Positions 13,325-45,699 of a stretch of 64,000 nt of DNA are shown in pieces. Origin of the DNA: Macrostomum lignano (Eukaryota). Position 1 is the stretch's first letter. Each line of letters opens with the position of its first letter. A program made the position numbers and the translations under genes. Below the pieces are notes generated by a model. That model was not told the origin of the DNA and made no database searches. It worked only from the letters and a program-made list of their open reading frames with translations. The DNA is taken from NCBI GenBank assembly GCA_002269645.1, contig NIVC01000240.1, forward strand, positions 1 to 64,000. Direction: 5' to 3'.

Positions 13325-13541
13325 TTAACAATCTTGAAAACTAAGCACACCAATGCTAGTTATGCTAGTCAATAACTAGCTAGTTAATATGGCAATAGCA
13401 ACCAAAGAGATATCTAAACTTGCTTGAACTTTTGATAACCTATGAAATTCTGAGGTTCCAGGAACAATCATATCTCGGAATATCAAAAGTTCAAATTCAA
13501 TCCAATTTGTAATCCCATTAAAACTATGAAAAAACGCTCAC

Positions 13542-13709
13542 CTTTTTGCCTGATGCGGCAGCAGCAGCAAGTTTCTCTTCCACTGTCTGGTCAACAACCT
13601 CTGCCAATTCATCTTCCTTGATATGAGGATCTAAGATGCCCTTCTTGCGCAAGATTTCTTCCCATTCAGTGCCCCTGTCTGATTGGGGTGCACAGTACTG
13701 CCAGCTCAT
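13542..13709 (-). CDS. PDCL3: Phosducin-like 3, exon 1
   Basis: MSWQ...TEWEEILRKKGIL (TEWxDILRKKGIL motif). Donor AAG|GTGAGC. The four exons give 244 aa. Confidence 0.9.
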
Positions 13710-14370
13710 ATGTGTTCTTTTAGTTATAAATTTAAAAATTTATACACAATAGTATAAAACACTCAGTAGCTGTAAAACAGATTGAAGGTGTTGCATTTAT
13801 AATGCACAAGTAATTATATTTAAATATTACTATTAAGCTATTTAGTAAAGTTTCTTATAACTAGGATTTAAGGATTTTTACTTCTAAAAATATTAAGTAT
13901 AATTTATTAAAAGTAAAAAAATAAATAAAATATTACTATTCAATGTTACTTTGATGCTCAAAAATTATATACTTTTCCTTTTAATATCCATAGTAGAATA
14001 GTGAAGTGCCTAATTAAGCACATTTTTTATTTAAAACTATAAACTAAAAAATCTATTATATACTAAATATGGTTTATCTATGTGTGATCAGTTTTAGCAA
14101 AAATGGCCTAACTGATTTTCTTCAAACTTGCAATAGTGAATTTTGATTTTTTTGTTCTTTTTCAACTCATTTTAAATGCCCACTGTTGTCTAAAACAAAA
14201 AAGAGCTTCATTCTATCCCAGATATTTCAAAGTAAGACAAAATACTCTAAAATGCTTTAAAAGCCATTTTGCAACATATTTTATAAAGTTAAGAAAGTGC
14301 TAACTAAAAACATTAAGCAATATAGATTTTTGATACCATATGCATATGGTCTTACTAGTATTATAAATCT

Positions 14371-14672
14371 GAGGTGGTTAAAGTCTAATGGTTACTGTTG
14401 AACTCATGACTTGAAGGTTAGGGTTCAATTCCCAATCCCACTGGAACAATTTATATACTTGAGCAAAACACTTAACTCTACATTGCTTCAGTTCACCTAG
14501 CTGTAAAATGGGGAATCAGTATTAGCTGGGGTAATTGATTGTAGTATATATTTCAACCCTTAGCCATTGGACTGAACAGTCATATGTAGCCTTTAGATGT
14601 GCCATCCAATAGCTGCAGATGAGCTATTAATTACACAACTGGCCCAATTAGGGTAGGCATAATCTATTATTA
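14371..14672 (+). mobile_element. CORE-type SINE, copy 2 (no CpG left, TpA-enriched)
   Basis: Colinear with copy 1 over its full length (CTTAACTCTACATTGCTTCAGTTCACCTAGCTGTAAAATGGGG). Confidence 0.8.
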
Positions 14673-17600
14673 AAGATAGTTTTCTTCTAATATTTTAAAT
14701 CTGAACTGTCTATCTATCTAAGCAATTGATAGCTCAACCTATTTGAACAAAACTTGCATCATTTGATAACAACTTTGTCAAATCAATACACATATATTGG
14801 CTGAGAATTTGATTGAATTGATTATTTTTTATATTTGAAATGGAAAATGGTTGATTCAGTACAAAACATTAACTGACTATTTTAGGCTTTTGTTGTAATT
14901 GGTCACTATTATTTTCTTGTGAATGTTAACAAAATAGTTTTGAAATTAAAATTGGTTTATCATTTTAAAATGGATAAACTTTTTAATATACATGTAATAC
15001 CTTGGCATATTTTAAAATTGTTATTTGAATAGGATCACATTAGCAATTTCAATGTATTCCATATACCTGACTATTAGGCTTAAGAGCAGACTAGTCATTA
15101 TTTCATTATTAATATATATTCATCAATGCATATAAAAATATTGTGTATATAAGTATGAAGCCAGGCCAAGCCAGGCCTAAATAGCTTGCATAAACCATAA
15201 AAAACTTGCTCAATAGCTAGGGCAGAGCACAAGCACCTATACCACAAAGATGCAAGATTGCAAGAGCATAAGAAAGGCAAAAACATATAACATAGAGAGC
15301 AAGCAAACTTCCTATAGAGGGCCAAAGGGAATGGCTCCCTAATATTTAGTTTAGTTGTGCATTATGTACATGCTTTCAATGCTTTGCTTTAAACATAACT
15401 GGCTACCTTTTAATCAAGGCTCAGTTATATTGCCTTGAAATAAGCAACCAAGTTATATGACTCATGGACATAGACAAAAAAGAATAGGTATAGACTATGT
15501 AATTACTAAAATTGGCCAGATTTGATTGTTGTATAAATGAGCCTTAAGTCTTGGCTAGGTTTATTCATAGGAATGTGTACTGCTAAAATTGCTATTTAAT
15601 TTTTATGCATGTATGAATTTAGCTTTTTTATGGATTTTTAGCCATAATTATTGCAAGCTATATATATATAGCTTGTGTATTAGTTAATGAGCCATTTAAG
15701 AGCCAGGTAAATTTTATTTTGTTATTTAAAGAAGCAAAATTTGAATCATTTGAAAAATGAAACAAAAGCAATGGTCATAGCATCAAAGTGCCTTACTTTG
15801 AGTCACAGTATTGACTTGCCTTATGAGGAAAATATGTATGAAAAATCACGTATTATAAACATTTCAAAAAGGGCAAGAAGGGGTCCTAACTAAAAAGCCT
15901 AGCAAGACAGGTTCCTGAATAATTATACTGCTATAATTTAGAATTTTATAGTATTAGATATCATCAGTGTCCTTGTGCAGTCTAGCTGCAGAAAAATGAT
16001 GACACATAATTACAAAAAGCCACTATGATAATGGCTAATAAATTGGCAAAAATGAGAGTCTACAATTTTTGGAAACTTCTATAGACTAAATAGAACATTG
16101 GCAAAAAGGCAAAATTATTTTGCTAAAAATGCAACAACTAGCAGGTATAGAGGCATCTTGCATATATAATGCTTCCAACATATTTGCTATTAACAAAACT
16201 AAGGTACCTAAGGCTGGAGGTTTGCAAGCCTAGTTTGAGGAGTGACAACCTGTTGTAGCAATTTCATTGACATATCTTGGCTCTTAATAAGAATTCAAAA
16301 TAGTTGTAGATTACTATCTAATTGCCTGTAAGGATAGCTGTTGTCCAAATTAGAAGCAGAGATCGATCAGCTAGGATTTTATATTTTTATGTCAACTAAT
16401 ACTTTTAACACTCTTATTGTGAGGTTATGATTAAAAGCAAGTGGCACAAAAGACTGGCAGACGCGGCCCAGAAAGGGGAAACGAACCCCTTAAGCGACGA
16501 AATATATTGTTTTTGTTATTTAAAAGAAAATATATATTTGCCAAAAATACGCCGACTTAGCGGCCACGACGCGTGACTAAATAGCACAGAGCGGAGGGGG
16601 AGGCTGCCCTAAGCCCTGCACGCACGCAGAGCACCAGCCCCCACCAACCCACCAAAGTAAGGCCAGGCCGGCGCGGGTTGGGGGGGGGAGGGTTTAAAAC
16701 CAGTTAAAGTCAGATACCTGCCTCAAACTGACGTATTAAACCCCAAAAGACTAACGCAGAGTAAAAGCAAGTGGCACAAAAGACTGGCAGACGCGGCCCA
16801 GAAAGGGGAAGCGAACCCCAACACCAACAGAAAGAGGGAGAAAAATAAATTCAACGAGCCGCAGAAGAAATTAAAACCAAGATAAAAAAGCCATGTCAAA
16901 GCATTAGCTCTAAGACTCGCACCTGAGCTTGGGATCTGCTTCAGCCGTCGCAGCTCGCTCCGCTCGAGAACCGCGCCAGAGACCGGGGCTCAGCGCGAGC
17001 GACGCCTGCTCAAGCAACCGGGCTGCCGTTGACTCGACTCATTGAGGCAGGCCCTGCGCAGATCTTCCGGCTGCGCCTTGGCCCGGCCAAAGTAGCGCAG
17101 CAGAAACAGCAGCATGTGGCGGGGATGCGTCAGGCAGCGCGACAGCGGGTCGCTCAGCAGCTGCCAGGACCCCGGCATATGGTCGTGCCTCAGACTCTGC
17201 CAGAGTGGCCGTTTTGAGCAGGGTCATGATGATTGGGTTGCTGGAGGCACCGCGGTTGATGGAGCCGACCGCCGCGCTGCTGTCGACGTAGCCAGGCCAC
17301 CTTGCCGCCGGCCAGCTGCTCCTGGAACAGAATGATGGCGAGCAGCGGCAGTACCGTCTCCTTGGCGTTGATGTGCTCGCTCAGGAAGATGCCACCGGCG
17401 TCACTGCAGAAGTCGACGAGGCGGAACTCGCGCTGGCCATCAGAGGTGCTCAGGATCATGCCACTGGCACTGACGCAGGCGTCCGTCTCGACCGCTGCCA
17501 GCACTCGGGCACGCCGCCACAGCTTGTCGGTCGGGAACACTGGGATTTCATGCTGCCTGAACTGCAACTGGGCCAGTAGCTCGCCGCGCACCGGTACTCG

Positions 17601-17690
17601 ATGATGCTGCTCAGGAATAGCGATGGTAATCTCCAGGAGCGCGCGAAGCAGGGCCTTTGCAGGTTTGGCCACTTTGCAGAACCAGTTCAG

Positions 17691-18620
17691 TTAGCCGACT
17701 AGGTGCTGAAGGCGACGTTTTTGCAGGCTCTTCGAGTTGGCGCAGTCCTGGAGAAGTTCTTTAAGGCCGTCCATCTTCTCGGTGGGCAGTGACAGCAGGC
17801 CAGTCAATGTGTCGATCCGCACACCCAGGAAAGTGACCGAAGTGGCTGGGCTCTGCGTCTTGGCCCAGTTGATCTCAAAGCCGAGGCGCTGCAGGGTGGC
17901 CAGCAGAAAATTGTGCAGCTGCAGGCAGACCTCGTAGTCCCGGGCAGCTATGCAGAAATCGTCGAGGTATGCGATGACGACGAATTTGGACAGATGCGAG
18001 ATTTTCCTGTACATGAAGCGCTTGACAGCTTGCGTTAGGCGGTGGAAAATGTTGATTGATGCCGCCGCACCGAATGGGAGTCGCGTGTCAACCAGGTAGG
18101 TTGGCTGACCGTCCAGCTCGAACGTCCACCGGAGCCCCTGTCGCCTGATAGCAGTCTGGGTGCACCTGAACGCTTCGGTAGGCGTGGCGAAGGTCGACCT
18201 TGCTGAGAAACCAGCCTGGTGCCAGCTGCCTGGTGAGATCCTCGACATTAGCAAACTTCATCTTCTGGCGGGGCTTGTACAGATCGTTGAGGCTGTTGCC
18301 CTGTGGCGCGGACGCGTCGTGAATCAGGTGGATGGCGCCGTATGCCTTCGGGACGGCGCCCAGTGGGCTGATGATGGTCGGCCTGGCGATGCCCAAGTCA
18401 GTTGCGCTGATGTACGGTACATCATGTACCGGCCACCCACGACCTCCTCTCTGATCTGCAGCTCAACGGCATGCCGATTCGCCTCGCAGCGGGCGGATGC
18501 ATGATTTTCGAGCTGGGATTCGCTGGTCGGAGCCGCGTCGGTGATGCAAAAGCCATCGCGAATTCCCGCGATCAGAAACTCCGCGTCCGAGCCTCCGAGC
18601 TGGACTGGTGTCCAAGCAGC
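17691..18620 (-). pseudogene. Reverse transcriptase of the Ngaro-type element (frameshifted)
   Basis: EFLIAGIRDGF...IHLIHDAS.P...FLSKVDLRHAYRSVQVHP...YLVDTRLPFG...AYLDDF...LGFEINWAKT...FLGVRID, spread over three frames. Confidence 0.88.
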
Positions 18621-18699
18621 AGTTGACAGCGGCCAACGTTTTTGGAGTGCAGCCACCGGGCCGGCAACAGGGCCGGCAGCAGGGCCGGCAGCAGGGCCA

Positions 18700-19708
18700 G
18701 CGGCAGGGCGAGTGGCAAGGTGTGTTGTGTTGAGCTGTGTTGCAGATGCGGCAGATGTGGGCGAAATTGCAGGTGTGTCTGTGGCAGCCTTTTTTGCTAT
18801 TGAACAGGCCGCAGATGACTTGTCCAGCGGATGACAGCTGGCCCTGCTACGGTGACCCTGGACTCCTTGACCAACCGCCACTGGGCCAGCAGCTCGCAGG
18901 TTTTTAGGCGCCGTCATATGCTTGATGATGAGGTTCAGATCAGGGCTGTCCCAGTCGCGCTGTCGCGAGTGCTGCTGCAGCCTCATGTCCTGGTCGTACT
19001 GGAGCACCACCTTCCAGTCGTAGCCTGCGTCGATCAGCTCGCCGATGTGGATGTTAAAGTTGAGGTAGGCGCTCAGCCTCTTGCAGTCGGGCTGTCCATC
19101 CGTACCGGGCGCCACCAGCTGGCCGGTCTTCAGCAGTCGCTGCATGATCCGCGTGTTGGCAGCCACCCACTGGCCGAAGTTGACTCCGGACAGGCTCGGC
19201 GTTGCGCCTTTCAGAGTCAGGCGACCATGTTCCTGTGTCAGCCATCCTCCCGACTGCTGCCTCTCGTCCAGAAAGTCCGGGATGAGCAGCGCTGATGGGG
19301 GCCGCTGGGCTCCGGCCGAATCAAACCTCGGTTGTCAGCTCTGGTCCCCGAACAGGCTGGCGTAGATGTCCAGCCCTCCTCTGGCCAGCGGGGGCGATGC
19401 GGTGCCACTGCAGATCGACTGCACTTCATCCCGCAACTGGGCCTCAGCCTTCTGCAGTTTCAGCAGCTCGATCCTCTTCTGAGTCTGCCGAATCTGCACT
19501 TCTGTGGCCTCCTTCGCTGGCGCAGCCTGGCGCACGTCATCTTCGTCCTGGTCATTGTCACCATTGTCGTCGCTGGGAGCTTGTTTGGCCTGGCTTGCAG
19601 CAAGCAGGCGGCCTATCAGCTCTTCTTTATTGCCACTTGTAGTAAGGCCTTCTCGCGTAAGCCATCTTTGAGGGCCTGCATGGTCATGCTGCCTAACGTA
19701 GAGTCCAT
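18700..19708 (-). pseudogene. Gag-like ORF of the Ngaro-type element with N-terminal SAP motif and C-terminal Cys/His finger
   Basis: MDSTLGSMTMQALKDGLREK(G)LTTSGNKEELIGRLL after restoring one G. In-frame TGA at 19335-19337. LLIPDFL and YDWKVVLQYD segments. Confidence 0.7.
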
Positions 19709-20479
19709 TGTGATTGCAGTGCTTGGCAAATTAGGCAGGCTAAAAATATTTTGCCAAAAATATGCCAAATCAGCGGCCACAATGCGTGACTAAATAGCAT
19801 AGAGTGGAGGGGGAGGCTGCCCTAAGCCCTGCATGCATGCAGAGCACCAGCACCCCACCAACCCCACCAAAGCGAGGCCAGGCTGGCGCGGGGAAGGGTT
19901 TAAAACCAGTTAGAGTCGTATACCTGCCTCAAACTGACGTATTAAAGACTCCAATTTTGCCTTGTGCTTCTATGCAATAGTCTATAATATCCTTTGAAAT
20001 AGAATAATTAAAGGAACACTCAAAGTATTATCAAGCTGACAATATTCCCATTGGGTTAATCAGTATATATGCACTTTCATAAATGGAAAAAAGGGACTAA
20101 AATTATTACCTCTTAAACTAATTTATTTGCTTGCAATTTTAAACATAATAAATAAAAGGTTACCACTTATGGAAAATTAATTTATCAAGTTGCTTTTTAA
20201 TTATTAAAAAATGGCAAAATTTACATTTATACTATTATAAAAAATTTTATAATGGGATAATAACAAGATTATTATAGTGCTACTTTGGAGAGTTTTCCAT
20301 TTTGAGTAAGCAGCCGATAGGGGCATAGCCTTCTATTAAGCAGATAAGAACCAAAATAAAGGGTCTAAATTCTACAAACTAGTATCTTATAATAATATAA
20401 TTTGTCAACTTTAGAAATAACTTGCCTAATAGATAATAAATTAATATACCTTTTAATACTTTTTATATAAGTGAAGTTT

Positions 20480-20762
20480 TATTTAGTCTTTAGCTAGCTT
20501 AGTCCTAAAAAAAGAGTTTTGATTTAGTAAGAACTTGGGTTTACTATAGATGTGACTTACATGTAAAAGAAACCCTAAAGCAAAATTAACGCTACTTTGG
20601 GTAAACAGCAGGAGTAATTATGACTGTCTTAATAAGGCAAAATGCCTCATCATCTACTTAGTAATACTTGGGTAATTCAGGTAGGCATTTTTGTGACTTC
20701 CTTGGTTGGCTGCCAAATTGGTTGGCCATATTGGCCAACTTTGCCAACTGTTGCACATGTAT
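20480..20762 (-). mobile_element. Decayed copy of the hAT-like MITE at 23298-23594
   Basis: The reverse complement of 20548-20762 aligns to 23298-23517 with mostly CpG transitions. The left end is degenerate. Confidence 0.75.
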
Positions 20763-21339
20763 AATAATATATTTAGTCAAGTTAGTTTTTTTTTTCTCTT
20801 CCTAAATAGCAATAGGCTGGATTGCTATTAGAATTAAAGTTAGGCCTAACTTAAATGAGTGTTCAGTGTCATTGATTAAAGCAATAAATATTTTAGGCAT
20901 TAAGTTATAAGCCTATAGCTATACATTGTATAGTATAATAGAGATAGGTTAATGGGGATTAAAGTTAAGAAAAATGTTTTTATCTTTAATATAAAAGGAA
21001 CTTTCTACTTAGGTTAAGAACTCAAATAATAAAGATTGTTAAGGCTTTATACATATTTGTTAAGTAGGATATAATAGGCACTAAAAGTAGACCTAAGATA
21101 AATGTTTTTTAATGAGAATAACTCCTAATCCTTATTAGAATTATACTTAAATAATAGGCCCTAAATTATAAAGACTATAAATATATAGTATACACTTTAG
21201 ATATTTTGGATAAAAGACTGAAATGAAGATCCACAGTTCAGAAGGCAACACATGCAACATGTATGCCAGGATTTCCTAACATATAATAAGGAAAGGTACT
21301 TGCCATTTTCAGCATATTCCAATATACTAAAAATCAAAA

Positions 21340-21944: not shown

Positions 21945-23115
21945 GAAGCGCAATGTCAAACATAGAAGAGCCACCATGTCGAACAATAAAGAGCCAACAT
22001 TTCGAATATAAAAGAGTTACCATGTCAAACATAAAAGAGCCACCATGCCAAACATAAAATAAGCACTATGTCAAACATATACGTGACTCTATGTCAAAGA
22101 TTAAAAAGTCACCATGTCAAACATAGAAGAGCCACCATATCAAACCTAAACAAGCCACCACGTCTAACATTTAAGAGCCACCACATCTAACATTAAAGAG
22201 CCACCATGTCAAACATTTAAAAGCCACCATGTCAAACATTTAAGAGCCACCTTGTCAAACATTTAAGAGCCACCATGTCAAACATATATGTGACTTTATG
22301 TTAAACTTTAAAGAGCCACCATTTTGAACATTAAAGAGCCACCATGTAAAATATTTAAGAGCCACCATGTCAAACATTAAATAGCCACTTTGTCGAACAT
22401 TAAAGAGCCACCGTGTCAAACATAAAAGAGCCACCATGTTAAACATTAAAGAGCCACCATGTCAAACATAAAAGAGCCACCATGTCAGACATTAAAAAGC
22501 CACTGTATCAAACATAAAAGAGTTACCATGTAGAACAAAAAACAGCCACCATGTCGAAAATAAAAGAGCCAGCCACCATGTAGAATATTAAAGAGCCACC
22601 ATGAAGAACATTAAAGAGCCACCATGTCAAAGATTTAAAAGCCACCATGGCAAACATATATGTGGCTTTATGTCAAACATAAAAGAGCCACTATGCCAAA
22701 CATAAAATAAGCACTATGTCAAACATATACGTGACTCCATGTCAAAGATTAAAAAGCCACCATGTCAAACATTTAAAAGCCACCATGTCAAACATTTAAG
22801 AGCCACCATGTCAAATATATATTTGACTTTATGTCAAACATTAAAGAGCCACCATGTCAGACATTAAAAAGCCACCATATCAAACATAAAAGAGCTACCA
22901 TTTAGAACAAAAAACAGCCATGATGTCGAACATTAAGGAGCCACTTTGTCTAACATTAAAGAGCCACCATGTCAAAGATTTAAGAGCCACCATGTCAAAT
23001 ATTTAGGAGCCACCATGTCAAACATAAAAGAGCCATCATGTGAAACATATACGTGACTCAATGTCAAACATTAAAGAGCCACCATGTCAAACATTAAAGA
23101 GCCACCTTTTTAAAC
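21945..23115. repeat. Degenerate 23-bp minisatellite
   Basis: Unit TTAAAGAGCCACCATGTCAAACA, with GTCGAAC / GTCAAAC / GTCTAAC variants. Confidence 0.9.
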
Positions 23116-23297
23116 AAAAAGGGACCCTATTTTAAACATAAAAGAAGTGTCATGCCAAACAAAATGGAACCATTATAAAGCTAAGGAAATTGTTGCACTA
23201 GCTACTTGTTCTCTGGTGGATGCTTGCTATTTAAGGATGGATACTTGCTTACAAGGGGATGCTTGCTCTTGTGGGTGGAGGGTACTTGCTATCTGAG

Positions 23298-23594: not shown

Positions 23595-23639
23595 TATCTG
23601 AGAGGGGGTTGCTAGATATCTATAAGGTATCTTTATATC

Positions 23640-35400: not shown

Positions 35401-37004
35401 TTCACACTAAGAGTTTGCATCGAAGTCGATATGTAGGGGAGCTTAAATATATATTTAGCTAAAATAACTAAAATTGGCTAAAAAAGCTAAAAGTTGCGCA
35501 ACTACTGTATCACTTACTCTTGTATAGCATAGCATTCTGTCATCTAAATCATTTTACTATATTTACTATCGTTAAAATACTCATAATCACCAGACTTTGA
35601 TCAAAGACAGCAGGCCATAATAGTTTAAACAAATATTTCCAAATCAAGTCTGTAACCAAATATTATTACAAGTATTTTGCTAAAAGATATATACTATCTA
35701 AATAACTTGCATTTAATCTGTACTTGACAAAAGAGAAGAGGCTCATTCTATATAAGATGGACATTTTTGGAAAATAGAAAAAAGTCAATATTTTTGCTTG
35801 CCATTGCCTTATCAGCCAATTTTTTTACCAAATGTTTTTTATGTGTAATATCTACAATCTAAGAATAAATGAATGATAAAATGTTAGATTAGTATGCTAT
35901 CAAGTGGCAAAAAGTCATTTTTGTAAAAATTTAGACATTTTTCTAAGCAAAAGACATCATTAAGTTTGTGTACCTTTTAAAAACAAATAGAAAGCTTTGG
36001 AAGGTTGAAACAAACTATAGATAAAAGTATAGTACTTGCATCATCAGATAAAAGTATTGGTGACCAAATAATCTATTATATTTTTAATATATTGGTACCT
36101 CAAAGTTACTGAATTGACAGAAAAAAATATGTTACGACCATAATGTTATGACCATAAGGCTGCCTTTTCTTTTGTATCTTTGTTGCCTTTTTGAGTTTAT
36201 ATATTCTACAAAAAGAGTATGATTACTAAAGATGTTCTGAGTCAAATTTTAAAAAATGTATTGCAAAATATCAAAAATAAAAATGTTATAAGACTTTTAC
36301 CTTTTAGTTTCTATATGTCAAAAATCCTGTTGTTACGACCATAAGTGCCTTTCAAGGTTTAATAGCATCTATACTAATGATGATATCTACATGAAACTCT
36401 ATAAAAATATTTTTTACAAAATTATCTTTCATTTAAAATATTGGTTTAGTATATTCTATTATTATATTTCATTTTATAAGTAAAAATAGCCTGTCATGTT
36501 ACGACCATGCTTATATGGAATGAGCCAAGAATATTCGCCACTATAACATTAAAACTTTTAAATAGCAACCAATGTTCATTAATTATAATTAATTATACTC
36601 TAATAAATGCCAATTTTGGCATGCTCCTAAGAAATTGTAATTTTTATACTTCACTGACAATATCTTGTAATTTTTATACTTCACTGACAATATCTTGTAA
36701 TTTTTGCAAGAAACTATGCAATTTGGTCAATAAGTGTTGAGTTTTAAGTTTTAAGAGAATTTATATTGCTGGAAAGATCCCCAAGAGTTTGGGGATATAA
36801 GTTATTTGCTTTAAATATGAAAACAAAAAGCACAGCATTAAAAAAACGATTTCCATACTTTTAAACTTTCTGCCAAGATTGTAGTTGGGGGGAGGTTGCG
36901 TACACAAATTCAAGCCAGCTATCATTTGAGTAATTTCAGTAATGGAGGAGGCGGTGACAAATTTCAATTGGTTTGATTATCAGTGCTTTCAGTCCATCAG
37001 ATAA

Positions 37005-38600
37005 GAAAGTAGAGAGAAGAGATTTCAAGGAGAAGAGAGGATAGAAAGATGATAGAAAAGACAGTAGATATGAGAGCTGTGAGATTAAAGACGAGTCGAT
37101 GACAGAGGGGAGAGAAGAGGGGAGTGAGGTGGGAATGATGAAGAGGGAGAGCGAAGAGAAGAGAATGTAGAGGGAAGAAAGGAGGGGAGAGAGGAAAAAT
37201 GAGAGAGCAAAGGAGGGAGGAAAGATGGGAGGAGAGAGGGATAAGAGAGTACAGAGGAGAGAGAAGAAAGATGAGACAGGAGACGGTAGAGAGGAGAGGG
37301 GAAAGATGAGAGATGATTAAGGAGAGGGTAAGAGAGAAAATAGGAGTATGAGAAATGAGAGCAGAGAGAAGAGACGAGAGAGAAAAGAGAAGAGAGAGAG
37401 AGGGCAGGGTGGAGGAGAGGCAATAGATAAGCGAGTAGAGATGAGAGATGGAAGAGAAGAGGAGAGATAAGAGAGAATTGAGAGAAGACAGGAGAGAAGA
37501 CAGGAGAAAGAGAAGCGAGAAGAGAAGAGAGAGAGCAAAGGGGAAAGATGAGAGAATAGAGATAAGAAAAAAGAGATAAGAGCGCAGAGAGGAGAGATGA
37601 GAGATAGGAGGTGATTGATAAGAAAGTAAGAGTAGAGATGAGAGAGATGAGAGCAGAGAGAAGAGATTAGATAAAGGAGCAAAGAGGAGAGAGGAGACAG
37701 GAGAGAGTCTCAGTCTGGACCTGGCAGTCAATTTTTGCAAACAGGGAAAACATGCTATGATATTTCAGAGGTTTTATAGAGGATTTTTTAAATTTTTTGA
37801 CGTATATCCAGACAAGTAAAAAGCATATTTTATAGACTTTAGTTTCATAGTCTTGAGTGACTGAAATTTGATAGAGATAATATTTTTTTAATTGATGGAT
37901 TGTAGCTTGAAGGAGATGATACATGCTGGATTGCATTTAACGGAGATGATTTTGATGATATCTGTTTGATAGAAAGGATGAAATGGCTAAATGAAAGGGA
38001 ATAGAGAAAAGAGAAAAGGAAAGAGTGGATAAAATATTAGATGAAAGAGAACATGAAAAGAGAGAATCAAAAGGGACAGATTAGAGAAAAGAAAAAGAGA
38101 ATAAAGGCGAGAGAAGAGATGAGGGAATTAAGAGGAGAGAGGAGAGGGGGTAAGAGAGGAGAAAGAGGAGACAGGAGGGAGTAGAGCCAAAAGACGAGAG
38201 AGAAGAGATAAAAGAGTAAAGATGAGGGGAGAGAGAGGAGAGGGGAGAAAGTAGAAAGATGAGAGAGCAGAGAGGAGATAAAGGAGAGGAGAGTGAAGAG
38301 ATAAAAGAGAAGAGAGGAAAAAGTAGAGGAGAAAGTAGTGAGGAGAAAGAAGAGAGTAGATATGAGAGTGCAGAAAGGAGAGAGTAGAGAGTAGAGATGA
38401 GAGATAAGAGATGAGATGAGAAATGATTGATAAACGAGCAGATGAGAGCAGAGAGGAGATAGGAGAGATTAGAGATGAGAGAGCAAAGAGGAGAGAGGGA
38501 CAGACGAGAGTCTCAATCTGGACAATGGCAGGCAGTCAATTTTTGCAAACAGGTAAAACAACATGATTTTTGGGGGGTTAATAGAGGATTTGGAGAGGAT
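37005..38600. repeat. Two purine-rich (AG) low-complexity tracts, each ending in a shared ~90-bp terminus
   Basis: GAGAGTCTCA.TCTGGAC...GGCAGTCAATTTTTGCAAACAGG.AAAAC at ~37705 and ~38505. Confidence 0.8.
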
Positions 38601-39199
38601 TTAGACAATGGGATTCGTGTCATTGGATTCAGCTGATGGATTTCAGGGAATGAAATTCTGGCGATAGGTGTTAAATTTGTGTTAAATTTCTAGTTCTATA
38701 TATATTCCATTTCCACATAGCTCATAGTTGCTATTTATAAATTCTAAGATAAATGAACATAGCATACTAAGACTAAGCTAACTAAAGCATAGCATAGCAC
38801 AATGGCACAGACAGCATAATTCAATTGCATAAACTATTATTATAATTACTATGTTATATTGATGCTAATGCATGATATGATGGTCATTTTTTCACCAGTT
38901 TTTCTGTCTTAATGTCTAGTCAGAGTTTTAAAAAGTCTGTAACATTTTATATATAATTATAATATTATAAGATTACTAAATACCTTCTACAAATCTTTAT
39001 AGAATAATACTTACTAAGTTATTAGCATAATTTTACCAAAATTTCTTTTTTTTTAGATTAGATAATAAGATAAAGATACCAAGTTAGTCGAATTTGATTT
39101 AGTTTAGTAATAAATAATATCCCCCTTTATGTCTTATTCATTTTCCTTAGTCATTAGTAGCTTAGTTAGTAGAAAAAAACAGAAAAAGAAAGGGGATTT

Positions 39200-41640
39200 T
39201 AATTTGCTTTAATCTGATGCACAAATATATCTGCATATATCTGTCTATTGTTCTGCTTGTTTATGTTTAGTAAACTCACTGGTTGCTTTCTGCAGTTGTA
39301 GCTGAGCCTTGACTGTGCATTCATGGTCATTAGCTTGGAGTACAAACAGAGCTGCATCCACCTTAACAGTTCTCCAAAGCCTGCCATAGAATGCCACCTC
39401 ACTGATGCAAATCCAGAGCTTAGCAGCATAGGCCTGTTTCTTCCACTTGCTCTCTTTCAGCTTTACAGCAAGCAGCTTATCCTGCCTTAGTTGAATATCA
39501 TCTGTTTGCTAGCTTGCCAAACACCAGTGGTATTCAATGTGCAGCACTAAACAATGGGTGTTTATAAAACAGTGTGTCATCATTTTTAGTCTTTTCCTGT
39601 AACCACTCTGTGGTGCTGTTCTGACCAAATAGGATAATGAACTCTTGAGCCAGAGAGCATATATTTGGCTTGTTGCAAATAGTCCAGTCCAAAATACCTG
39701 CTTGCAATAGATATTGTCCTTTGGCACTAAAGCAGCCAGTATATTGCCTTTGCTAACAGTTTACAAAGACATCTACCAGGTAGGTGGTCCTGCATTTCCC
39801 TCTCTAGAAGCAGTAGCATAGCACCATCAAGAACCTAAGCGAAATAAAGTAGGTTGTAAAAATTAGTTTTCTGCATTTAAACATTTTGTTTTTTATTCTA
39901 ACCTGTTTTATTTGTCTTTGAAATCTTACTTGCATAGCCTAGGCAGAAATTGCATTTTTTGCAGCCAGAATCTTTGCTATTAGGCAGTCCTAGACCTCTA
40001 TGGATTCTGGCTCCTTGTGAATCTCTGCTTTTAGATTTGGGAATAACCCTTGGATGCCACCAATTACACAATTTGTATTAGTCACTATGTCCTAGACTCT
40101 TCAAATCAGTTAATTTAGACCACTCCAATATATATAGGCATAAAAGGCAATGTTAAATGTGGTAAATTTAAGTGAGCTATGGGTAGAATAAAAAATACAT
40201 CATCAATACATAAAAAAATACTTAACATTCATACTCATAAATGCATATACATATATAAGCAAGAGTTAGCTAAGATTCTTTTCACATTGCCATAAAGTGT
40301 GTCACTTAACAAATTGTGGATTTCAAGTCTAAGCAAGCCTCTAGCTTCAACATGACTGGCTAGGCTAACCATGTGCCAGTGCTATATTCATTCTAGAATC
40401 AGAAGCAATTTATCTGCAAGTGTATATGATGCTTACTCTAGACATATACTAAATTTGTCTGGGTTAATAAGCTGTGCATTGATGCTGACTAGCTGTACCT
40501 GTGTGCAAAAACTTAGCAAGCTTATAGAAGCTATTGTGCAGACCTTGCATTTAGTTTTCTGATATCTTTCTAGCTCTTTGTTTATACATATAACCTAGTT
40601 GAGTACACTGACTTGTCTAGATGGCATGATGCAGTCAAGTGTTCTTGGCATACTGGCAGAGGTCTTATAGCTGATTATTGTCAGTATTGCTACAAAGCTA
40701 CTTAAGATTAAGATAATGATCCATGATACTTGCTAGCAAGAAGCTAAAGGACATTAGCTTGCAGCAGAAAAATATTAATTGACTATAGCTTGATATATGC
40801 AGTTTGAACGCTATGGTCAACCACTTTTCAGTGCACTGTCTACAATAAATGAAAATTGCAGCCTCAAAGCTAGACTGCTAGGTAGACCTAGCACAGTGCC
40901 CATTAGACCTTCACTTCAAAATCACCAACATAGTGAGTTAATATTGCATTAGGCACAAAGTTGCTAATGGCTTTAAAAACTTCTCTAAAGTTGGCTTTTG
41001 ATTTTCCTAACATCAAGACAAATAGAGTAAAGGTGCCTACTTTATGCAGCTATCACATTCTAGGAATCTATAAATGGAATTAATTTATTTTAATAGCTCA
41101 CTGACAATGTATAGTGCTATTATAATGAACTATTTTTTGTATTTATGTAGCACTGTCAGTTGCATATCAGTGTCCATTACAATGTGTCAACAGGTTGGCA
41201 GCCTAATGTTAGCATACAAACTGAGCTAGGATGAAATTGTTATTGATTTCAAAATTCAATTCCACAAATGTTGCCACACTCAATTGACATTCCTTGTCAT
41301 TTAATGCTCAGTAGACAAATTTATTTGGCTTGCCATTGACTGAATCATTTGCTTGCAGCAAGTGCTACTTGATAAGCTTGAGTGCTAGCCTACTTGCAAT
41401 GCATAGCATGATTGAGTTTTTGCCTATCAGTTGCATTTAGTACATTTTGACAGGAGTGCAAAACTTCTCCTTGGTATTACTAATGATCCTTATTAATCAG
41501 GGTCGCCTTGCAGTCTACCTAAGAGTTTCTTATAGTACATTGTCAATACATGGTTCTGTCACATGTTCTTTGATATGCATAGGTCTAGCCATCAAGTATC
41601 TAAATACCTGAGGAATGAGGAATATATGAGGAATACTAAC
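39200..41640 (-). pseudogene. Possible heavily mutated non-LTR retrotransposon RT remnant
   Basis: Minus-strand translation near 40960-40700 gives FEVKV*..GTVLG...FSFIVD and a degenerate xAxx-L-LLAS, resembling RT motifs, with many TAG/TAA stops. Weak. Confidence 0.3.
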
Positions 41641-42108
41641 ATATTTAAATAAAAACAAGTATGTATGGCATATGTGCCATTATATCCTCTTAGACAATAA
41701 TCTACGAGTACAAGATTAGTAATATAATTTTGTCTTTATTTCAAGCTTAGTTTCAGTAACTATTGTTAGCTTCAGCTAGAAGAAAAAGTATCATAAACAA
41801 GCTAGAAATATAAATTAATGCCACATTTAGCATATGAGAATGGAACCATGGCATGAGTACCTGTTCAAGATATGCATGTTCATACAATAGATAATTTATT
41901 TTGATAATAAAAGTAATGCTTGAGATATTTTAGAACCAAAATGAATTATAAAACAAAAAAACTTGCTAAAAAATATTTCACTACAGTGCTCAAATTTGCT
42001 CCATATTGCTCAAGTATTGCCATAGTCAGGGCTTGCATCCTGTATTTGAAACCTAGCTGTCAAAGCAACTTTTAGCCGCCAATGCAATCCCAATCCCAAT
42101 GGAGCGTC

Positions 42109-43254
42109 TTCATGATGTTTTTGAACTCATTCAAGCTTCTTCCGGTGAAGAAAAGACCTGACCCATTCAGCATCTCCTTGACCGGCAAACAGAAAAAAGT
42201 CCACGGTGCCAGGTCTGCACTATACGCAGGGTGAGTCATCAGCTGGACCCCACAGTCAGCCAGAAACTCAGAGTTTGAGCCGCCGTGTGCTCGCTGGCGT
42301 TGCATCTGGTTGACATGGCAAGCACCCCGCCCATGGCACGCATTCCTTGGGCACCTCTGCTCACAGCAGAGACTTTGGGCAGGCAAACCGTTGTGTACCA
42401 GTCAGCGGTGACTGTCTGGCGATCTTCAAGTGAAACGGAAGCCACATGCCCAGTGCGCATGAAGAAACAGGCCACCATCTGCTTGCCGACACTCCGGCTG
42501 CGTCGAAACTTGGTGGGGCTGTCCTCGTCTCCAAAGGTCCACATGGCTGACTGGCGCTTGCTTTCGGGGTCGTATTGATAAATCCAGGTCTCATCGCCCG
42601 TGAGGATGTCCCGGATACGCCGGCTGGTCCCAGATTCGAATTTCTGCAGCATGAATCGGCACCAAGCCACCCTGGTGTCCTTCTGCACGTCCGACAGCTG
42701 ATGGGGGATCCACCGGGAAGCCAGCTTCCGCACTCCAAGGTGTTCGTGCAGAATGGCGTGCACACTACCCGATCCAATACCGATCTCCTGCTGGATCTGC
42801 TGGTCGGTCACTCGCCGGTCAGCAATCATGCTGGACACAGCGCAGATATTTTCTGGAGTCACTGCGTCACAGGGTCTCCCGGATCGATGTTCATCTTCGA
42901 GGCTTTCTCGACCTCGGCGAAACTCAGCGAACCAGTTTTTGACGGTTGCGTATGAAGGACATACATGGGTAAAAACGTTCTGTAAAGTTTGATACGATTC
43001 GGTCGGCGACTTGCCTTGCTTGAAGTGCAAGTAAATCATTGCTCTGAAGTCGCGATTTTCCAGCTTCATTGTTGAATTGAAGAACTCAGGGGGTGAACTG
43101 ACTTTAACTCGCTGCAGTGGACTCAAAAGTGGCTGCTTCTGTTTGAAATTTTGTTGCAATACTTTTAAAAGTTGGTCTTTACCATAGACAAATTTCATGC
43201 TTCTACGTCTCGTGGATCCTACTCAGGCTAAAGACTTTCTGAGTGACCCTCGTA
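42109..43254 (-). mobile_element. Mariner (DD34D family) transposon, 3' end truncated/frameshifted
   Basis: 5' TIR TA|CGAGGGTCACTCAGAAAGTCTTTAGCC at 43254. ATG at 43069: MKLENRDFRAMIY...EDEHRSGRP...RWIPHQL...TGDETW...HPAYSADLAP. Confidence 0.92.
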
Positions 43255-43433
43255 TTTTATATGAACTCAAAATGAATTATAAAACTAAAAAAACTTGCAT
43301 AGAAAAATATTTCATGTTCTATCAGTGTCAAATTTGCTTTGCTTATATTGCTCAAGTATTGCCAAGTCAAGCTTGGCTTGCTCCCTGTATTTGTAACTTA
43401 AACCTAGATCTGTGTTTCAATGCGAACTTTTAG

Positions 43434-43543
43434 ACCTGCTTCGAATGCAATGGTCCCAATCCACAATGGGTCAGCGTCACATATGGCATCTGGATCTGTC
43501 TGGAATGCTCTGGCAAGCATCGTGGACTTGGTGTGCACTTAAG
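43434..43543 (+). CDS. ARFGAP1: ARFGAP1 exon 2 (C4 zinc finger of the GAP domain)
   Basis: tttag|[36 protein letters not shown]. The donor appears to lack one G (TTAAG|TTTTG). Confidence 0.9.
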
Positions 43544-43582
43544 TTTTGTCTAAGATATCTAAGATACCAGCGTCCTCTTTTA

Positions 43583-45003
43583 ATCCCTGGCATCTCAGCA
43601 TCTCCCCCTTGATCCATGGCACCTCAGCATCTCCCCCTTGACCCATGGCACCTCAGCATCTCCCCTTGACCCATGGCACCTCAGCATCTCCCCCTTGACC
43701 CATGGCACCTCAGCATCTCCCCCTTGACCCACGGCATCTCAGCATCTCCCCCTTGACCCATGGCACCTCAGCATCTCCCCCTTGACCCATGGCACCTCAG
43801 CATCTCCCCTTGACCCATGGCACCTCAGCATCTCCCCCTTGACCCATGGCACCTCAGCATCTCCCCCTTGACCCATGGCACCTCAGCATCTCCCCCTTGA
43901 CCCATGGCACCTCAGCATTCCCCCTTGACCCATGGCACCTCAGCATTTCCCCCTTGACCCATGGCACCTCAGCATTCCCCTTGACCCATGGCACCTCAGC
44001 ATTCCCCTTGACCCATGGCACCTCAGCATCTCCCCCTTGACCCATGGCACCTCAGCATCTCCCCCTTGACCCATGGCACCTCAGCATCTCCCCCTTGACC
44101 CATGGCACCTCAGCATCTCCCCCTTGACCCATGGCACCTCAGCATTCCCCACTTGACCCATGGCACCTCAGCATTCCCCCCTTGACCCATGGCACCTCAG
44201 CATTTCCCCCTTGACCCATGGCACCTCAGCATCTCCCCCTTGACCCATGGCACCTCAGCATCTCCCCCTTGACCCATGGCACCTCAGCATTTCCCCCTTG
44301 ACCCATGGCACCTCAGCATCTCCCCCTTGACCCATGGCACCTCAGCATCTCCCCCTTGACCCATGGCATCTCAGCATCTCCCCCTTGACCCATGGCACCT
44401 CAGCATCTCCCCCTTGACCCATGGCACCTCAGCATTCCCCCTTGACCCATGGCGCCTCAGCATCTCCCCCTTGACCCATGGCACCTCAGCATCTCCCCCT
44501 TGACCCATGGCACCTCAGCATCTCCCCCTTGACCCATGGCACCTCAGCATCTCCCCCTTGACCCATGGCATCTCAGCATTCCCCCTTGACCCATGGCACC
44601 TCAGCATCTCCCCCTTGACCCATGGCACCTCAGCATCTCCCCCTTGACCCATGGCACCTCAGCATCTCCCCCTTGACCCATGGCACCTCAGCATCTCCCC
44701 TTGACCCATGGCACCTCAGCATCCCCCCTTGACCCATGGCACCTCAGCATCTCCCCCTTGACCCATGGCACCTCAGCATCTCCCCCTTGACCCATGGCAC
44801 CTCAGCATCTCCCCCTTGACCCATGGCATCTCAGCATCTCCCCCTTGAGCCCATGGCACCTCAGCATCTCCCCTTGACCCATGGCAACTCAGCATTTCCC
44901 CCTTGAATGACCTCAGCATCTCCCTTGACCCATGGCAATCAGCATCTCTTGACCCATGGCAACGGTCAGCATATAATGGCACCTCATCTCCCTTGACCCA
45001 TGG
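43583..45003. repeat. 29-bp minisatellite filling ARFGAP1 intron 2
   Basis: Unit CCATGGCACCTCAGCATCTCCCCCTTGAC. Confidence 0.95.
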
Positions 45004-45579: not shown

Positions 45580-45699
45580 GTTTGTTTGGTGCCCAATGTT
45601 AAAATTAAACTTTCTTCCTTTTCTGTGTTGTAAATATTGTCTAAATCTAGATTCATAGTTTATTTATAGCGTACCTCTTTTACTTGTTTCAATTTAATT

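What the first reader, a model, noticed from the sequence alone, without database searches (positions are those of the whole stretch)
13340..45000. A ~31-kb RIP-like C-to-T hypermutation domain (CpG and CpA/TpG converted to TpA) in an animal genome
Seen: non-coding DNA here is AT-rich and TpA-rich with almost no CpG (by eye about ten CpGs in 33000-36100), while flanking intergenic DNA (e.g. 58-61 kb) keeps abundant CpG. Four internal paralog comparisons (SINE trio, Ngaro A1/A2, MITE pair, 225-bp duplication) show polarised CpG->TpG/CpA and, to varying degrees, CpA->TpA and TpG->TpA. Known: ordinary 5mC decay hits CpG, whereas CpA->TpA is the hallmark of fungal RIP (RID/Masc1-type methylase) and a side activity of DNMT3. 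Inference: a repeat-targeted germline methylation/deamination system that mutationally inactivates TE-dense domains and has sharp borders.
Basis: partly seen in the sequence, partly recalled or inferred. Interest (0 to 1): 0.85.

Follow-up and report, generated by a model that had tools for sequence, protein, structure and literature searches.

The report
Ordinary CpG-decayed, transposon-rich non-coding tract
The AT-rich, CpG-poor stretch is real, but it is a patchwork of old and young transposon insertions lying between and inside two housekeeping genes of an invertebrate-type genome, best explained by ordinary decay of methylated CpG plus general AT-biased mutation rather than a fungal RIP-like hypermutation system.

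Summary
The compositional observation holds. With repeats, young transposons and exons masked, 13.7-43.4 kb has GC 33% and CpG o/e 0.30 (median 500-bp window 0.16), against 0.86-0.94 in the flanks (p=4e-10).

It is not one uniform domain. It comprises the first exon of a phosducin-like gene, an 11.5-kb intergenic spacer, the 18-kb first intron of an ARFGAP1-like gene and that gene's second intron. CpG-free old blocks alternate with CpG-normal young insertions (Ngaro, mariner) and minisatellites.

Paralog comparisons confirm polarised CpG loss: MITE 12:0, Ngaro repeats 8:3, and the 14-kb SINE has lost every CpG.

The CpA-to-TpA claim mostly fails:
- A fourth, hidden SINE copy shows that six of the nine "private" TpA states in the trio are shared with it, alongside an indel.
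- Pooled CpA versus CpC/CpT odds ratio is 1.5 inside (p=0.10) and 1.3 outside.
- The RIP substrate index is 1.47, where RIP needs 1.03 or less.
- Young repeats are not hypermutated, and the exons checked (PDCL exon 1, ARFGAP1 exons 1-2) read intact.

One residue remains. One old SINE copy and about 5.5 kb of the oldest blocks fit a 2-3-fold CpA preference.

Verdict: a known phenomenon, of low interest.

The parts
12117..13709 (-). 5' part of a phosducin-like (PDCL3-like) gene: exon 3 at 12117-12263, exon 2 at 12590-12925, exon 1 with the start Met at about 13539-13709. The left border of the CpG-poor tract lies at exon 1 (last CpG at 13648).
   Evidence: Pfam Phosducin E=2.1e-11. Exon 1 translation and CpG positions.
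13030..13341 (+). SINE copy '13k' (tRNA-derived head), in PDCL intron 1. It retains 7 CpGs and has GC 0.49.
13710..16400 (.). Old CpG-free block with the classic 5mC-decay signature: GC 0.29, CpG o/e 0.02, CA/TG o/e 1.23, TpA o/e 0.96.
   Evidence: It matches simulation model A, which has CpG decay and no CpA effect.
14360..14688 (+). SINE copy '14k': all CpGs lost, GC 0.37. It shares an indel and 9 non-CpG states with the 33k copy.
16429..19946 (-). Young Ngaro (DIRS-order) retrotransposon. Layout on the minus strand: A1 19946-19742, one reading frame 19334-17190 with 3 in-frame stops, B1 16819-16759, A2 16740-16528, B2 16489-16429. GC about 0.6, CpG o/e 0.8-0.95.
   Evidence: RVT_1 E=6.9e-14. 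Repeats. Reading frame. Composition.
19951..21300 (.). Old block with a CA/TG deficit (o/e 0.90), TpA 1.10 and CC/GG 1.59. It contains MITE copy 20520-20800, which has lost 12 CpGs relative to its partner.
21953..23106 (.). Decayed 23-bp minisatellite (50 units, 76% match), used as the in-domain mutation spectrum. C>T at CpA is 25/249, CpC 8/100, CpT 10/100; T>C is 22/700.
23270..23552 (-). MITE copy that retains its CpGs; partner of the copy at 20520-20800.
24520..24850 (+). CpG-retaining patch (11 CpGs, o/e about 1) lying 450-780 bp upstream of the ARFGAP1-like ATG. Inferred to be an unmethylated promoter.
   Evidence: Searches show the sequence and CpG positions. The promoter reading is inference.
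25300..25362 (+). ARFGAP1-like exon 1 (MASPRTRRSLAKLKNQDGNS, followed by a GTAAGT donor).
25363..43436 (+). ARFGAP1-like intron 1 (18 kb), which forms the right-hand two thirds of the 'domain'. It is a patchwork of partly decayed sequence (25.9-32.9 kb, CpG o/e 0.3-0.8), old blocks, a GA-rich low-complexity tract (37.0-38.6 kb) and the mariner.
29460..29909 (.). 225-bp tandem duplication, 95% identical. There are 9 transitions and 2 transversions; the CpA-type transitions are unpolarised (2:3).
33001..35400 (.). Oldest-looking block: GC 0.28, CpG o/e 0.12, CA/TG 0.83, TpA 1.10, GpC 2.04. RIP substrate index 1.24.
33189..33534 (-). Fourth SINE copy, heavily mutated by transitions (GC 0.29, TpA count 27). 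Ordinary blastn misses it. A 5' fragment lies at 34247-34302 (+).
   Evidence: RY-coded self search, nhmmer E=1.5e-64, alignment, counts.
38601..41900 (.). Old CpG-free block with the classic 5mC-decay signature: CpG o/e 0.07, CA/TG 1.31, TpA 0.97.
42112..43263 (-). Young mariner-family transposon (319-aa ORF, CpG o/e 0.8-0.98), flanked by a direct repeat of about 150 bp.
   Evidence: HTH_48 E=1.9e-12 and Transposase_1.
43437..43550 (+). ARFGAP1-like exon 2 (zinc finger), intact and 89% identical to human.
   Evidence: Pfam ArfGap E=3.4e-16; PDB 3dwd E=1.3e-20.
43588..44948 (.). 29-bp minisatellite (47.6 units) in ARFGAP1-like intron 2. It is CpG-free only because the repeat unit has no CpG, so it is not evidence of decay.
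45010..47022 (+). Downstream ARFGAP1-like exons: 45010-45330, ALPS-motif exon 45424-45609, 46060-46125, terminal exon about 46390-47022. SINE copy '45k' (45690-45929) retains 9 CpGs. This is the CpG-normal right flank.

Best explanation
The span is ordinary non-coding DNA of an invertebrate-type, mosaically methylated genome.

Its layout is the promoter side of a phosducin-like gene (minus strand), an 11.5-kb spacer to a divergently oriented ARFGAP1-like gene (plus strand), and that gene's 18-kb first intron and second intron. The whole stretch is filled by nested transposon insertions and minisatellites of different ages.

The non-coding sequence here has evidently been CpG-methylated in the germline for a long time. 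That is inferred from sequence, not measured. As a result CpG has decayed to TpG/CpA at ten or more times the background rate. The general AT-biased transition spectrum, with C>T about 4 times T>C per site both inside and at the borders, has drifted the oldest pieces to 25-30% GC, which is near mutational equilibrium.

Young insertions (Ngaro, mariner, 121-bp tandem) still carry their CpGs. Exons and a small promoter patch are preserved. The flanks are exon-dense and unmethylated. Together these produce the apparent sharp borders.
For: Gene map:
- Searches place three host exons and a GTAAGT donor inside the span.

Compartments:
- Median CpG o/e is 0.16 inside and 0.96 outside, p=3.6e-10.
- TpG/CpA is in reciprocal excess inside (1.16 against 1.07-1.08), and reaches 1.23-1.31 in the two largest CpG-free blocks.

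Polarised CpG loss:
- MITE 12:0 and Ngaro 8:3.
- SINE_14k has 0 CpG, against 7-9 in copies with similar transversion divergence (2.5% against 2.0-3.4%).

Non-CpG spectrum is the same inside and at the borders:
- Site-pattern counts give a C>T to T>C ratio of about 4-5 in all four SINE copies, with total divergence ordered 33k > 14k > border copies.
- The in-domain array shows C>T of 8-10% in every context against T>C of 3.1%.

Simulation:
- Forward simulation of flank sequence under CpG x15 plus a 4:1 AT bias, with no CpA effect, reproduces the blocks at 13.7-16.4 and 38.6-41.9 kb (CpG 0.06, CA/TG 1.18-1.27, TpA 0.94-0.98 at GC 0.28-0.33).

Age structure:
- Ngaro keeps a frame of about 715 codons with 3 stops and CpG o/e of 0.8-0.95.

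Literature:
- Mosaic methylation of gene bodies and, in some invertebrates, of transposons, especially those in long active genes, is established (PMC8857917, PMC11292947).
Against: - No methylation data exist and the species is unknown, so methylation is inferred from CpG decay alone.
- The pattern is not classical gene-body methylation. The PDCL gene body and the 3' half of the ARFGAP1-like gene keep their CpGs, while the intergenic spacer and intron 1 do not. No CpG survives upstream of PDCL exon 1.
- Three old blocks (19.95-21.3, 24.1-25.9 and 33.0-35.4 kb, about 5.5 kb) have CA/TG o/e of 0.83-0.95, TpA 1.02-1.10, CC/GG of about 1.5 and CT/AG of 1.13-1.31. These fit a model with a 2.5-fold CpA preference better than the plain model.
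- The SINE copy inside one of these blocks shows C>T at CpA 11/18 against CpC/CpT 12/48 (p=0.009).
- GpC o/e of 1.6-2.0 and the TAGGCCTA excess are not reproduced by any simulated model.
Confidence: 0.78

Rival explanations
1. One reading: a RIP-like, repeat-targeted system methylates or deaminates cytosines in CpG and CpA contexts across a 31-kb TE-dense domain and so inactivates it.
For: - SINE_33k private C>T: CpA 11/18 against CpC/CpT 12/48, p=0.009, and symmetric on both strands.
- Three sub-blocks have a CA/TG deficit and a TpA surplus.
- TAGGCC occurs 27 times inside and 2 outside, while CAGGCC occurs 6 inside and 22 outside.
Against: - Whole-span substrate index is 1.47, and even the best sub-blocks give 1.08-1.24. 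RIP needs 1.03 or less, and real RIP gives about 0.3-0.9 (PMC6110257).
- Pooled CpA preference has an odds ratio of 1.5 (p=0.10) inside and 1.3 outside.
- The in-domain array shows no CpA preference.
- Six of the nine trio 'CpA>TpA' events are shared with the 33k copy, together with an indel, an A>G change and a transversion. This points to subfamily ancestry or parallelism.
- T>C (8-10%) and transversions (about 7%) accompany the C>T changes in the 33k copy, so it is simply old.
- Young repeats (Ngaro split repeats, 225-bp and 121-bp tandems, 95%-identical minisatellite, mariner) are not hit.
- The host exons checked inside the span (PDCL exon 1, ARFGAP1 exons 1-2) read intact.
Confidence: 0.04
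2. Ordinary CpG decay plus a weaker germline non-CpG (CpA) methylation by a DNMT3-type enzyme. This would add a 2-3-fold CpA>TpA bias that becomes visible only in the oldest blocks.
For: - Simulation model B (CpA x2.5) reproduces CA/TG of about 0.94, TpA 1.16, CC 1.22 and CT 1.35 at GC 0.28, close to the three old blocks.
- The SINE_33k rate ratio is about 3.
Against: - Other equally CpG-free blocks (13.7-16.4 and 38.6-41.9 kb) show no such effect (CA/TG 1.23-1.31).
- The in-domain array shows none.
- A similar weak CpA>CpY tendency is seen outside (OR 1.3), so it may be a genome-wide neighbour effect.
- The starting composition of the blocks is unknown, and G+C clustering alone depresses all mixed dinucleotides there (AC/GT 0.67, GA/TC 0.70).
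Confidence: 0.1
3. APOBEC/AID-like editing of retroelement cDNA or RNA before or during insertion produced the heavily mutated copies.
For: The hypermutated look is element-specific: SINE_33k is much more mutated than SINE_14k.
Against: - The changes are strand-symmetric: C>T 15/37 against G>A 13/43 in the 33k copy, and 5/25 against 6/34 in the 14k copy.
- There is no significant 5'-neighbour preference.
- The non-retroelement sequence around the copy has the same composition.
Confidence: 0.02
4. No methylation is involved. The AT-rich CpG-poor blocks simply reflect the intrinsic composition of the transposons that built them, or a regional lack of GC-biased gene conversion.
For: - Adjacent old blocks on either side of the Ngaro insertion differ in dinucleotide signature (CA/TG 1.23 against 0.90), which shows that origin matters.
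- The equilibrium GC implied by the 4:1 bias is about 20-28%.
Against: - Copies of the same SINE and MITE families differ in CpG specifically, and in a polarised way, according to location.
- The simulation without CpG hypermutability keeps CpG o/e at about 0.92-0.96 at any GC (model D).
Confidence: 0.05

Closest known systems
Mosaic (compartmentalised) CpG methylation of invertebrate genomes, with 5mC-driven CpG depletion of the methylated compartment and, in some taxa, methylation of intragenic and intergenic transposons (PMC8857917, PMC11292947, PMC8857923, PMC4378273)
   Same: Bimodal CpG o/e in multi-kb blocks. Reciprocal TpG/CpA excess. Polarised CpG>TpG/CpA in transposon copies. The transposon-rich long first intron of a housekeeping gene is affected. 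A small CpG-retaining promoter patch is present.
   Different: The depleted block covers an intergenic spacer and a first intron, while the neighbouring gene bodies stay CpG-normal. The pattern therefore looks transposon- or region-directed rather than classical gene-body methylation. Actual methylation was not measured.
Fungal repeat-induced point mutation (RIP) and the AT-rich isochores it creates
   Same: AT-rich blocks with abrupt edges next to GC-richer gene-bearing DNA. C>T and G>A occur on both strands. TpA/ApT is about 1.0-1.3 in the old blocks.
   Different: The substrate index (CpA+TpG)/(ApC+GpT) is 1.08-1.54, where RIP requires 1.03 or less. CpG, not CpA, is the dominant target. T>C changes and transversions accumulate in step with C>T. 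Young duplicates are untouched. Host exons inside the span survive.
Age-dependent CpG decay of Alu and L1 copies in vertebrates, and mutagenic repair around deaminated CpGs (PMC3999860; PMC3218846)
   Same: Older copies lose all their CpGs and drift AT-ward. Rates depend on local context and GC content.
   Different: Here only part of the genome behaves this way, because the flanks keep CpG o/e of about 1.
APOBEC3-type editing of retroelements
   Same: Dense C>T / G>A changes in a retroposon copy.
   Different: There is no strand asymmetry and no significant 5'-neighbour signature.

Membership tests
Fungal-type RIP | [quoted passage not shown] | tested here: not met
   The whole span gives 0.92 and 1.47. 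The old blocks give 1.0-1.21 and 1.08-1.54. 4 of about 105 inside 600-bp windows pass both thresholds, against 12 of about 108 outside.
Fungal-type RIP | C>T strongly preferring CpA over CpC/CpT | tested here: inconclusive
   One SINE copy gives 11/18 against 12/48 (p=0.009). The array gives 25/249 against 18/200. Pooled OR is 1.5, p=0.10, and 1.2 without that copy. Outside OR is 1.3.
Fungal-type RIP | Almost exclusively G:C>A:T transitions, without matching T>C changes or transversions | tested here: not met
   SINE_33k also carries T>C at 8-10% and about 7% transversions. Array 21953 has T>C at 3.1% and many transversions.
Fungal-type RIP | Duplicated sequences are the target, including recent duplicates | tested here: not met
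   The Ngaro A repeats differ mainly at CpG (11 of 15 transitions). The 225-bp and 121-bp tandems are 93-95% identical. The 29-bp array is 95% identical with 0/284 CpA changes. Ngaro and mariner keep CpG o/e of 0.8-0.98.
Fungal-type RIP | RID/Masc1-type cytosine methyltransferase encoded in the genome | not testable with these tools
   The species is unknown and no genome is available. The protein search returned nothing.
Invertebrate mosaic CpG methylation with 5mC decay | Bimodal CpG o/e in long blocks | tested here: met
   Median is 0.16 inside and 0.96 outside, p=3.6e-10. The histograms barely overlap.
Invertebrate mosaic CpG methylation with 5mC decay | CpG deficit mirrored by a TpG/CpA excess | tested here: met
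   CA/TG is 1.16 inside against 1.07-1.08 outside, and 1.23-1.31 in the two largest blocks. The feature is not met in three smaller old blocks (0.83-0.95).
Invertebrate mosaic CpG methylation with 5mC decay | Location-dependent, polarised CpG>TpG/CpA in copies of one repeat family | tested here: met
   MITE 12:0, Ngaro 8:3. SINE CpG counts are 7 and 9 at the borders and 0 and 0 inside.
Invertebrate mosaic CpG methylation with 5mC decay | 5-methylcytosine actually present in germline DNA of the block | not testable with these tools
   This needs bisulfite, EM-seq or nanopore data from the species.
APOBEC-type retroelement editing | Strand-asymmetric G>A (or C>T) with a 5'-neighbour preference | tested here: not met
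   C>T 15/37 against G>A 13/43, p=0.36. GpC against other 5' neighbours, p=0.28.
Ngaro (DIRS-order) retrotransposon, for the element at 16429-19946 | Split direct repeats A1-ORFs-B1-A2-B2 plus reverse transcriptase | tested here: met
   The A pair is 19946-19742 and 16740-16528. The B pair is 16819-16759 and 16489-16429. RVT_1 E=6.9e-14. No tyrosine-recombinase domain was detected by Pfam.

The most novel reading that the evidence does not exclude
Besides ordinary CpG decay, the oldest blocks (about 5.5 kb at 19.95-21.3, 24.1-25.9 and 33.0-35.4 kb) record a germline process with a 2-3-fold preference for CpA, hitting both strands. One candidate is DNMT3-type non-CpG methylation followed by deamination. 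This would be a weak, RIP-reminiscent mutational footprint in an invertebrate.
Probability: 0.08. Interest if true: 0.55.

Novelty: already known. Interest (0 to 1): 0.15.

Why it matters
A true RIP-like system in an animal would be a new kind of genome defence. The evidence here says instead that the window shows the familiar consequence of compartmentalised CpG methylation plus AT-biased mutation acting on transposon insertions of different ages.

The practical lesson is methodological:
- Small paralog trios can mimic context-specific hypermutation when subfamily structure, copy age and parsimony polarisation bias are ignored.
- Purine/pyrimidine-recoded self-alignment is a cheap way to find the missing old copies.

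Tried and rejected
- Rfam and tRNA scans of the window found nothing.
- A protein homology search with the ADIP exon, meant to identify the species, returned no hits. The species remains unknown and no genome-wide test was possible.
Ten long ORFs from GC-richer in-domain segments had no Pfam domain. The host exons were found only after recognising ARFGAP1 motifs by eye and running tblastn with remembered human sequences. They were then verified against Pfam and PDB. The query contained one lysine that the window does not encode.
- My first polarised counts suggested that border and in-domain SINE copies have equal T>C but a four-fold difference in non-CpG C>T. Site-pattern counting showed this was a parsimony artefact: homoplasy patterns had been scored as T>C in the border copies. 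The C>T:T>C ratio is similar everywhere.
- The APOBEC hypothesis was rejected on strand symmetry.
- 5'-neighbour (GpC protection) and UV-type effects were not significant.
- The extra pairs 4529-4762 / 30601-30795 and 14000-14142 / 21294-21443, and the 18-bp-array element, were too diverged or too short to be informative.
- The three in-frame stops of Ngaro (TGA, TGA, TAA) are too few to assign a context.
- A literature search for RIP outside fungi found only fungal papers.

Full report
**What the window is**

The sequence is a gene-dense animal locus with a strongly mosaic composition: 500-bp GC ranges from 0.24 to 0.67. It carries very many 16-36-bp minisatellites. CpG o/e is about 1 over many kilobases of the flanks. 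This, with only 37-39% identity of the phosducin-like exon 2 and the ARFGAP1 ALPS exon to human, indicates an invertebrate-type, partly methylated genome. The species could not be identified.

Recognisable genes are:
- a C2H2 zinc-finger ORF at 8.1-8.9 kb;
- a phosducin-like gene on the minus strand;
- an ADIP/SSX2IP-like exon at 49.1-49.7 kb;
- a NIF-phosphatase-like ORF at 62.9 kb.

**Gene map of the 'domain'**

That gene therefore starts at the left border and runs leftward.

Motifs seen in ORFs at 45.0-45.6 kb led to an ARFGAP1-like gene on the plus strand:
- exon 1 (MASPRTR...) at 25300-25362, followed by GTAAGT;
- exon 2 at 43437-43550, 89% identical to human (Pfam ArfGap E=3.4e-16; PDB 3dwd E=1.3e-20);
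- further exons at 45.0-47.0 kb.

A 330-bp patch with 11 CpGs lies 450-780 bp upstream of the ARFGAP1 ATG. It looks like a protected promoter, though this is inference.

**Checking the observation**

CpG depletion is real and large. After masking arrays, young TEs and exons, the inside is 20.7 kb with GC 0.330 and CpG o/e 0.30. The flanks have CpG o/e 0.86 and 0.94. Median 500-bp CpG o/e is 0.16 inside against 0.96 outside (p=3.6e-10).

The span is nevertheless a patchwork:
- CpG-free old blocks at 13.7-16.4, 19.95-21.3, 24.9-26.0, 33.0-36.5 and 38.6-41.9 kb;
- partly decayed sequence at 26-33 kb, with CpG o/e 0.3-0.8;
- CpG-normal young insertions.

The young insertions include a structurally complete Ngaro element (A1-ORF-B1-A2-B2) at 16429-19946, with an RT domain and one frame of about 715 codons containing three stops. 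They also include a mariner at 42.1-43.3 kb. The 'sharp borders' are insertion boundaries and gene 5' ends.

**Is CpA/TpG converted to TpA? Composition**

- Overall CA/TG o/e is higher inside (1.16) than outside (1.07-1.08), as expected when CpG decays into TpG/CpA.
[quoted passage not shown] The whole span gives 0.92 and 1.47. The old blocks give 1.0-1.21 and 1.08-1.54.
- Only 4 of about 105 inside windows pass both thresholds, against 12 of about 108 outside, where most are tandem arrays. Real RIP in the cited fungal paper gives 1.3-1.8 and 0.3-0.9.

**Is CpA/TpG converted to TpA? Paralogs**

In the Ngaro A repeats, 11 of 15 transitions are at CpG (8:3 toward the 19.8-kb copy), and CpA-type changes are 1:1. 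In the MITE pair, 12 of 19 transitions are at CpG (12:0), and CpA-type changes are 3:2. In the 225-bp duplication, CpA-type changes are 2:3.

Changes private to the 14-kb copy were CpG about 6.5/16, CpA about 9.5/26, CpC 4/26 and CpT 2/27.

Recoding the window to purine/pyrimidine and self-aligning it exposed a fourth SINE copy at 33189-33534 (minus strand). It is heavily mutated by transitions and ordinary blastn had missed it (nhmmer E=1.5e-64). The four-way alignment shows that the 14k and 33k copies share:
- a 15-bp indel;
- an A>G change;
- a transversion;
- six of the nine 'CpA>TpA' states.

Most of the trio signal is therefore subfamily ancestry, or at best parallelism. It is not independent in-situ hypermutation of the 14k copy.

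**What remains after that correction**

Changes private to the 33k copy are CpA 11/18, CpC 6/22, CpT 6/26 and T>C 9/108 (Fisher test, CpA against CpY, p=0.009). They are equally distributed on both strands: C>T 15/37 and G>A 13/43. This excludes cDNA editing.

That copy is simply old, with about 7% transversions and T>C of 8-10%.

My first comparison seemed to show equal T>C but four-fold more non-CpG C>T inside than at the borders. Site-pattern counting showed this was a parsimony artefact. With homoplasy patterns assigned properly, the border copies have C>T of about 5-9% and T>C of about 0-3%. The 14k copy has 11-24% and 4-5%. The 33k copy has 35-47% and 9-11%. The AT bias is thus about 4-5-fold everywhere, and only the ages differ.

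What truly differs by location is CpG. The border copies keep 7 and 9 CpGs, with no transitions at the 24 CpG-associated positions scored. The 14k copy has similar transversion divergence and keeps none.

**Larger polarised samples**

Minisatellite units compared with their consensus give, for the decayed in-domain 23-bp array, C>T at CpA 25/249, CpC 8/100 and CpT 10/100, with T>C 22/700. This is AT bias without any CpA preference.

A Mantel-Haenszel pooling of all in-domain strata gives a CpA versus CpY odds ratio of 1.53 (p=0.10), or 1.20 without the 33k SINE. Outside strata give 1.31. Array variants are not independent events, so these figures are indicative only.

**Simulation**

I evolved masked flank sequence forward with a 4:1 AT-biased transition spectrum and 15-fold CpG hypermutability.
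- At GC 0.28-0.33 this gives CpG 0.06, CA/TG 1.18-1.27 and TpA 0.94-0.98. That matches the blocks at 13.7-16.4 and 38.6-41.9 kb.
- Without CpG hypermutability, CpG o/e stays at about 0.92-0.96.
- Adding a 2.5-fold CpA preference gives CA/TG 0.94, TpA 1.16, CC 1.22 and CT 1.35 at GC 0.28. That is closer to the three small old blocks at 19.95-21.3, 24.1-25.9 and 33.0-35.4 kb, which show CA/TG 0.83-0.95, TpA 1.02-1.10, CC about 1.5 and CT 1.13-1.31.
- An 8-fold, RIP-like preference overshoots.

In those three blocks C is followed by A 30-33% of the time, against T 40-47%. TAGGCC is 27-fold and CAGGCC 6-fold represented inside, against 2 and 22 outside.

It is modest, confined to about 5.5 kb, and confounded in two ways. 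The starting composition is unknown. G+C clustering there is strong and depresses all mixed dinucleotides (GpC o/e 2.0, AC/GT 0.67, GA/TC 0.70), and no model reproduces it.

**Repeat targeting and inactivation**

The youngest repeats in the span are not hypermutated. These are the Ngaro split repeats, the 225-bp and 121-bp tandems, the 95%-identical 29-bp array (0/284 CpA changes) and the mariner. The host exons checked inside the span (PDCL exon 1, ARFGAP1 exons 1-2) read through intact. This is the opposite of what a duplication-triggered, domain-wide inactivating process predicts.

**Conclusion and comparison with known systems**

The best explanation (confidence about 0.78) is a long-methylated, transposon-rich intergenic-plus-intronic tract in a mosaically methylated invertebrate genome. 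Its sequence layers differ in age. CpG decays fast through 5mC deamination, and everything else drifts under the genome's ordinary AT-biased spectrum.

This is a known phenomenon. Mosaic methylation of gene bodies, and in some invertebrates of transposons, notably those in long active genes, is documented (PMC8857917, PMC11292947, PMC8857923, PMC4378273).

It works unlike fungal RIP in target (CpG rather than CpA), trigger (location and age rather than duplication), spectrum and outcome. It fails the RIP index test.

The deviation from textbook gene-body methylation is worth noting but cannot be interpreted without a methylome: the spacer and first intron are depleted while the neighbouring gene bodies are not. 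The weak CpA signal in the oldest blocks is also unresolved. I give about 8% to a real non-CpG component.

Noticed in passing
window 43437-45330: In the ARFGAP1-like gene the conserved segments FVRSATMD, (K)WKDIELEKMRVGG and REFLSKQ lie in three different reading frames. The lysine codon is reduced to a single A, and an in-frame stop follows. No canonical GT..AG pair cleanly joins exon 2 to exon 3. The locus may be a decaying paralogue, or the assembly may carry small indels.
   Followed up: partly
window 20841, 24190, 24329, 25181, 34326, 34543, 34960: The palindrome TAGGCCTA occurs 7 times where about 0.2 is expected. Three of these are GTTAGGCCTAA. The flanks are non-homologous, and the occurrences are confined to the three old blocks with a CA/TG deficit. 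It is either a survivor or product motif of CpR-biased decay, or an unrecognised functional or TE motif.
   Followed up: partly
window 13710-16400, 33001-35400, 38601-41900: GpC o/e is 1.8-2.0 in these three CpG-free blocks (1.4-1.7 in the other old blocks), against about 1.3 in the flanks. None of the simulated mutation models raises GpC; they give 1.2-1.3. The 5'-G protection test was not significant.
   Followed up: partly
window 24520-24850: This 330-bp patch keeps 11 CpGs (o/e about 1) inside otherwise CpG-poor DNA, 450-780 bp upstream of the ARFGAP1-like start codon. It is probably an unmethylated promoter. By contrast, no CpG at all occurs for 2.2 kb upstream of the phosducin-like exon 1.
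   Followed up: no
window 16528-16740 vs 19742-19946: Within one Ngaro element the 5' A1 repeat has lost 8 CpGs and the 3' A2 repeat only 3. This suggests heavier methylation of the element's 5' (promoter) end.
   Followed up: partly
window 41933-42075 and 43264-43415: A direct repeat of about 150 bp flanks the mariner-bearing segment just upstream of ARFGAP1 exon 2. It is a local duplication associated with the insertion.
   Followed up: partly
window 45563-45703 and 45858-45989: A direct repeat of about 140 bp flanks the 45-kb SINE copy.
   Followed up: no
window 10663-12094 and 43588-44948: Two long 28/29-bp minisatellites, one at the 3' side of the phosducin-like gene and one in ARFGAP1 intron 2, are related to each other (about 71% identity). 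Minisatellites with 16-36-bp units make up roughly a fifth of the whole window.
   Followed up: no
window 57523-58020 and 59567-60069: A 500-bp direct duplicate outside the domain is 88% identical and GC-rich, with ORFs. Its differences are unusually rich in transversions (31 tv against 20 ts).
   Followed up: no
window 33675-33990: An AT-rich inverted repeat (hairpin or foldback, arms about 95-150 bp) lies next to the hidden SINE copy. A SINE 5' fragment at 34247-34302 is in inverted orientation to it.
   Followed up: no
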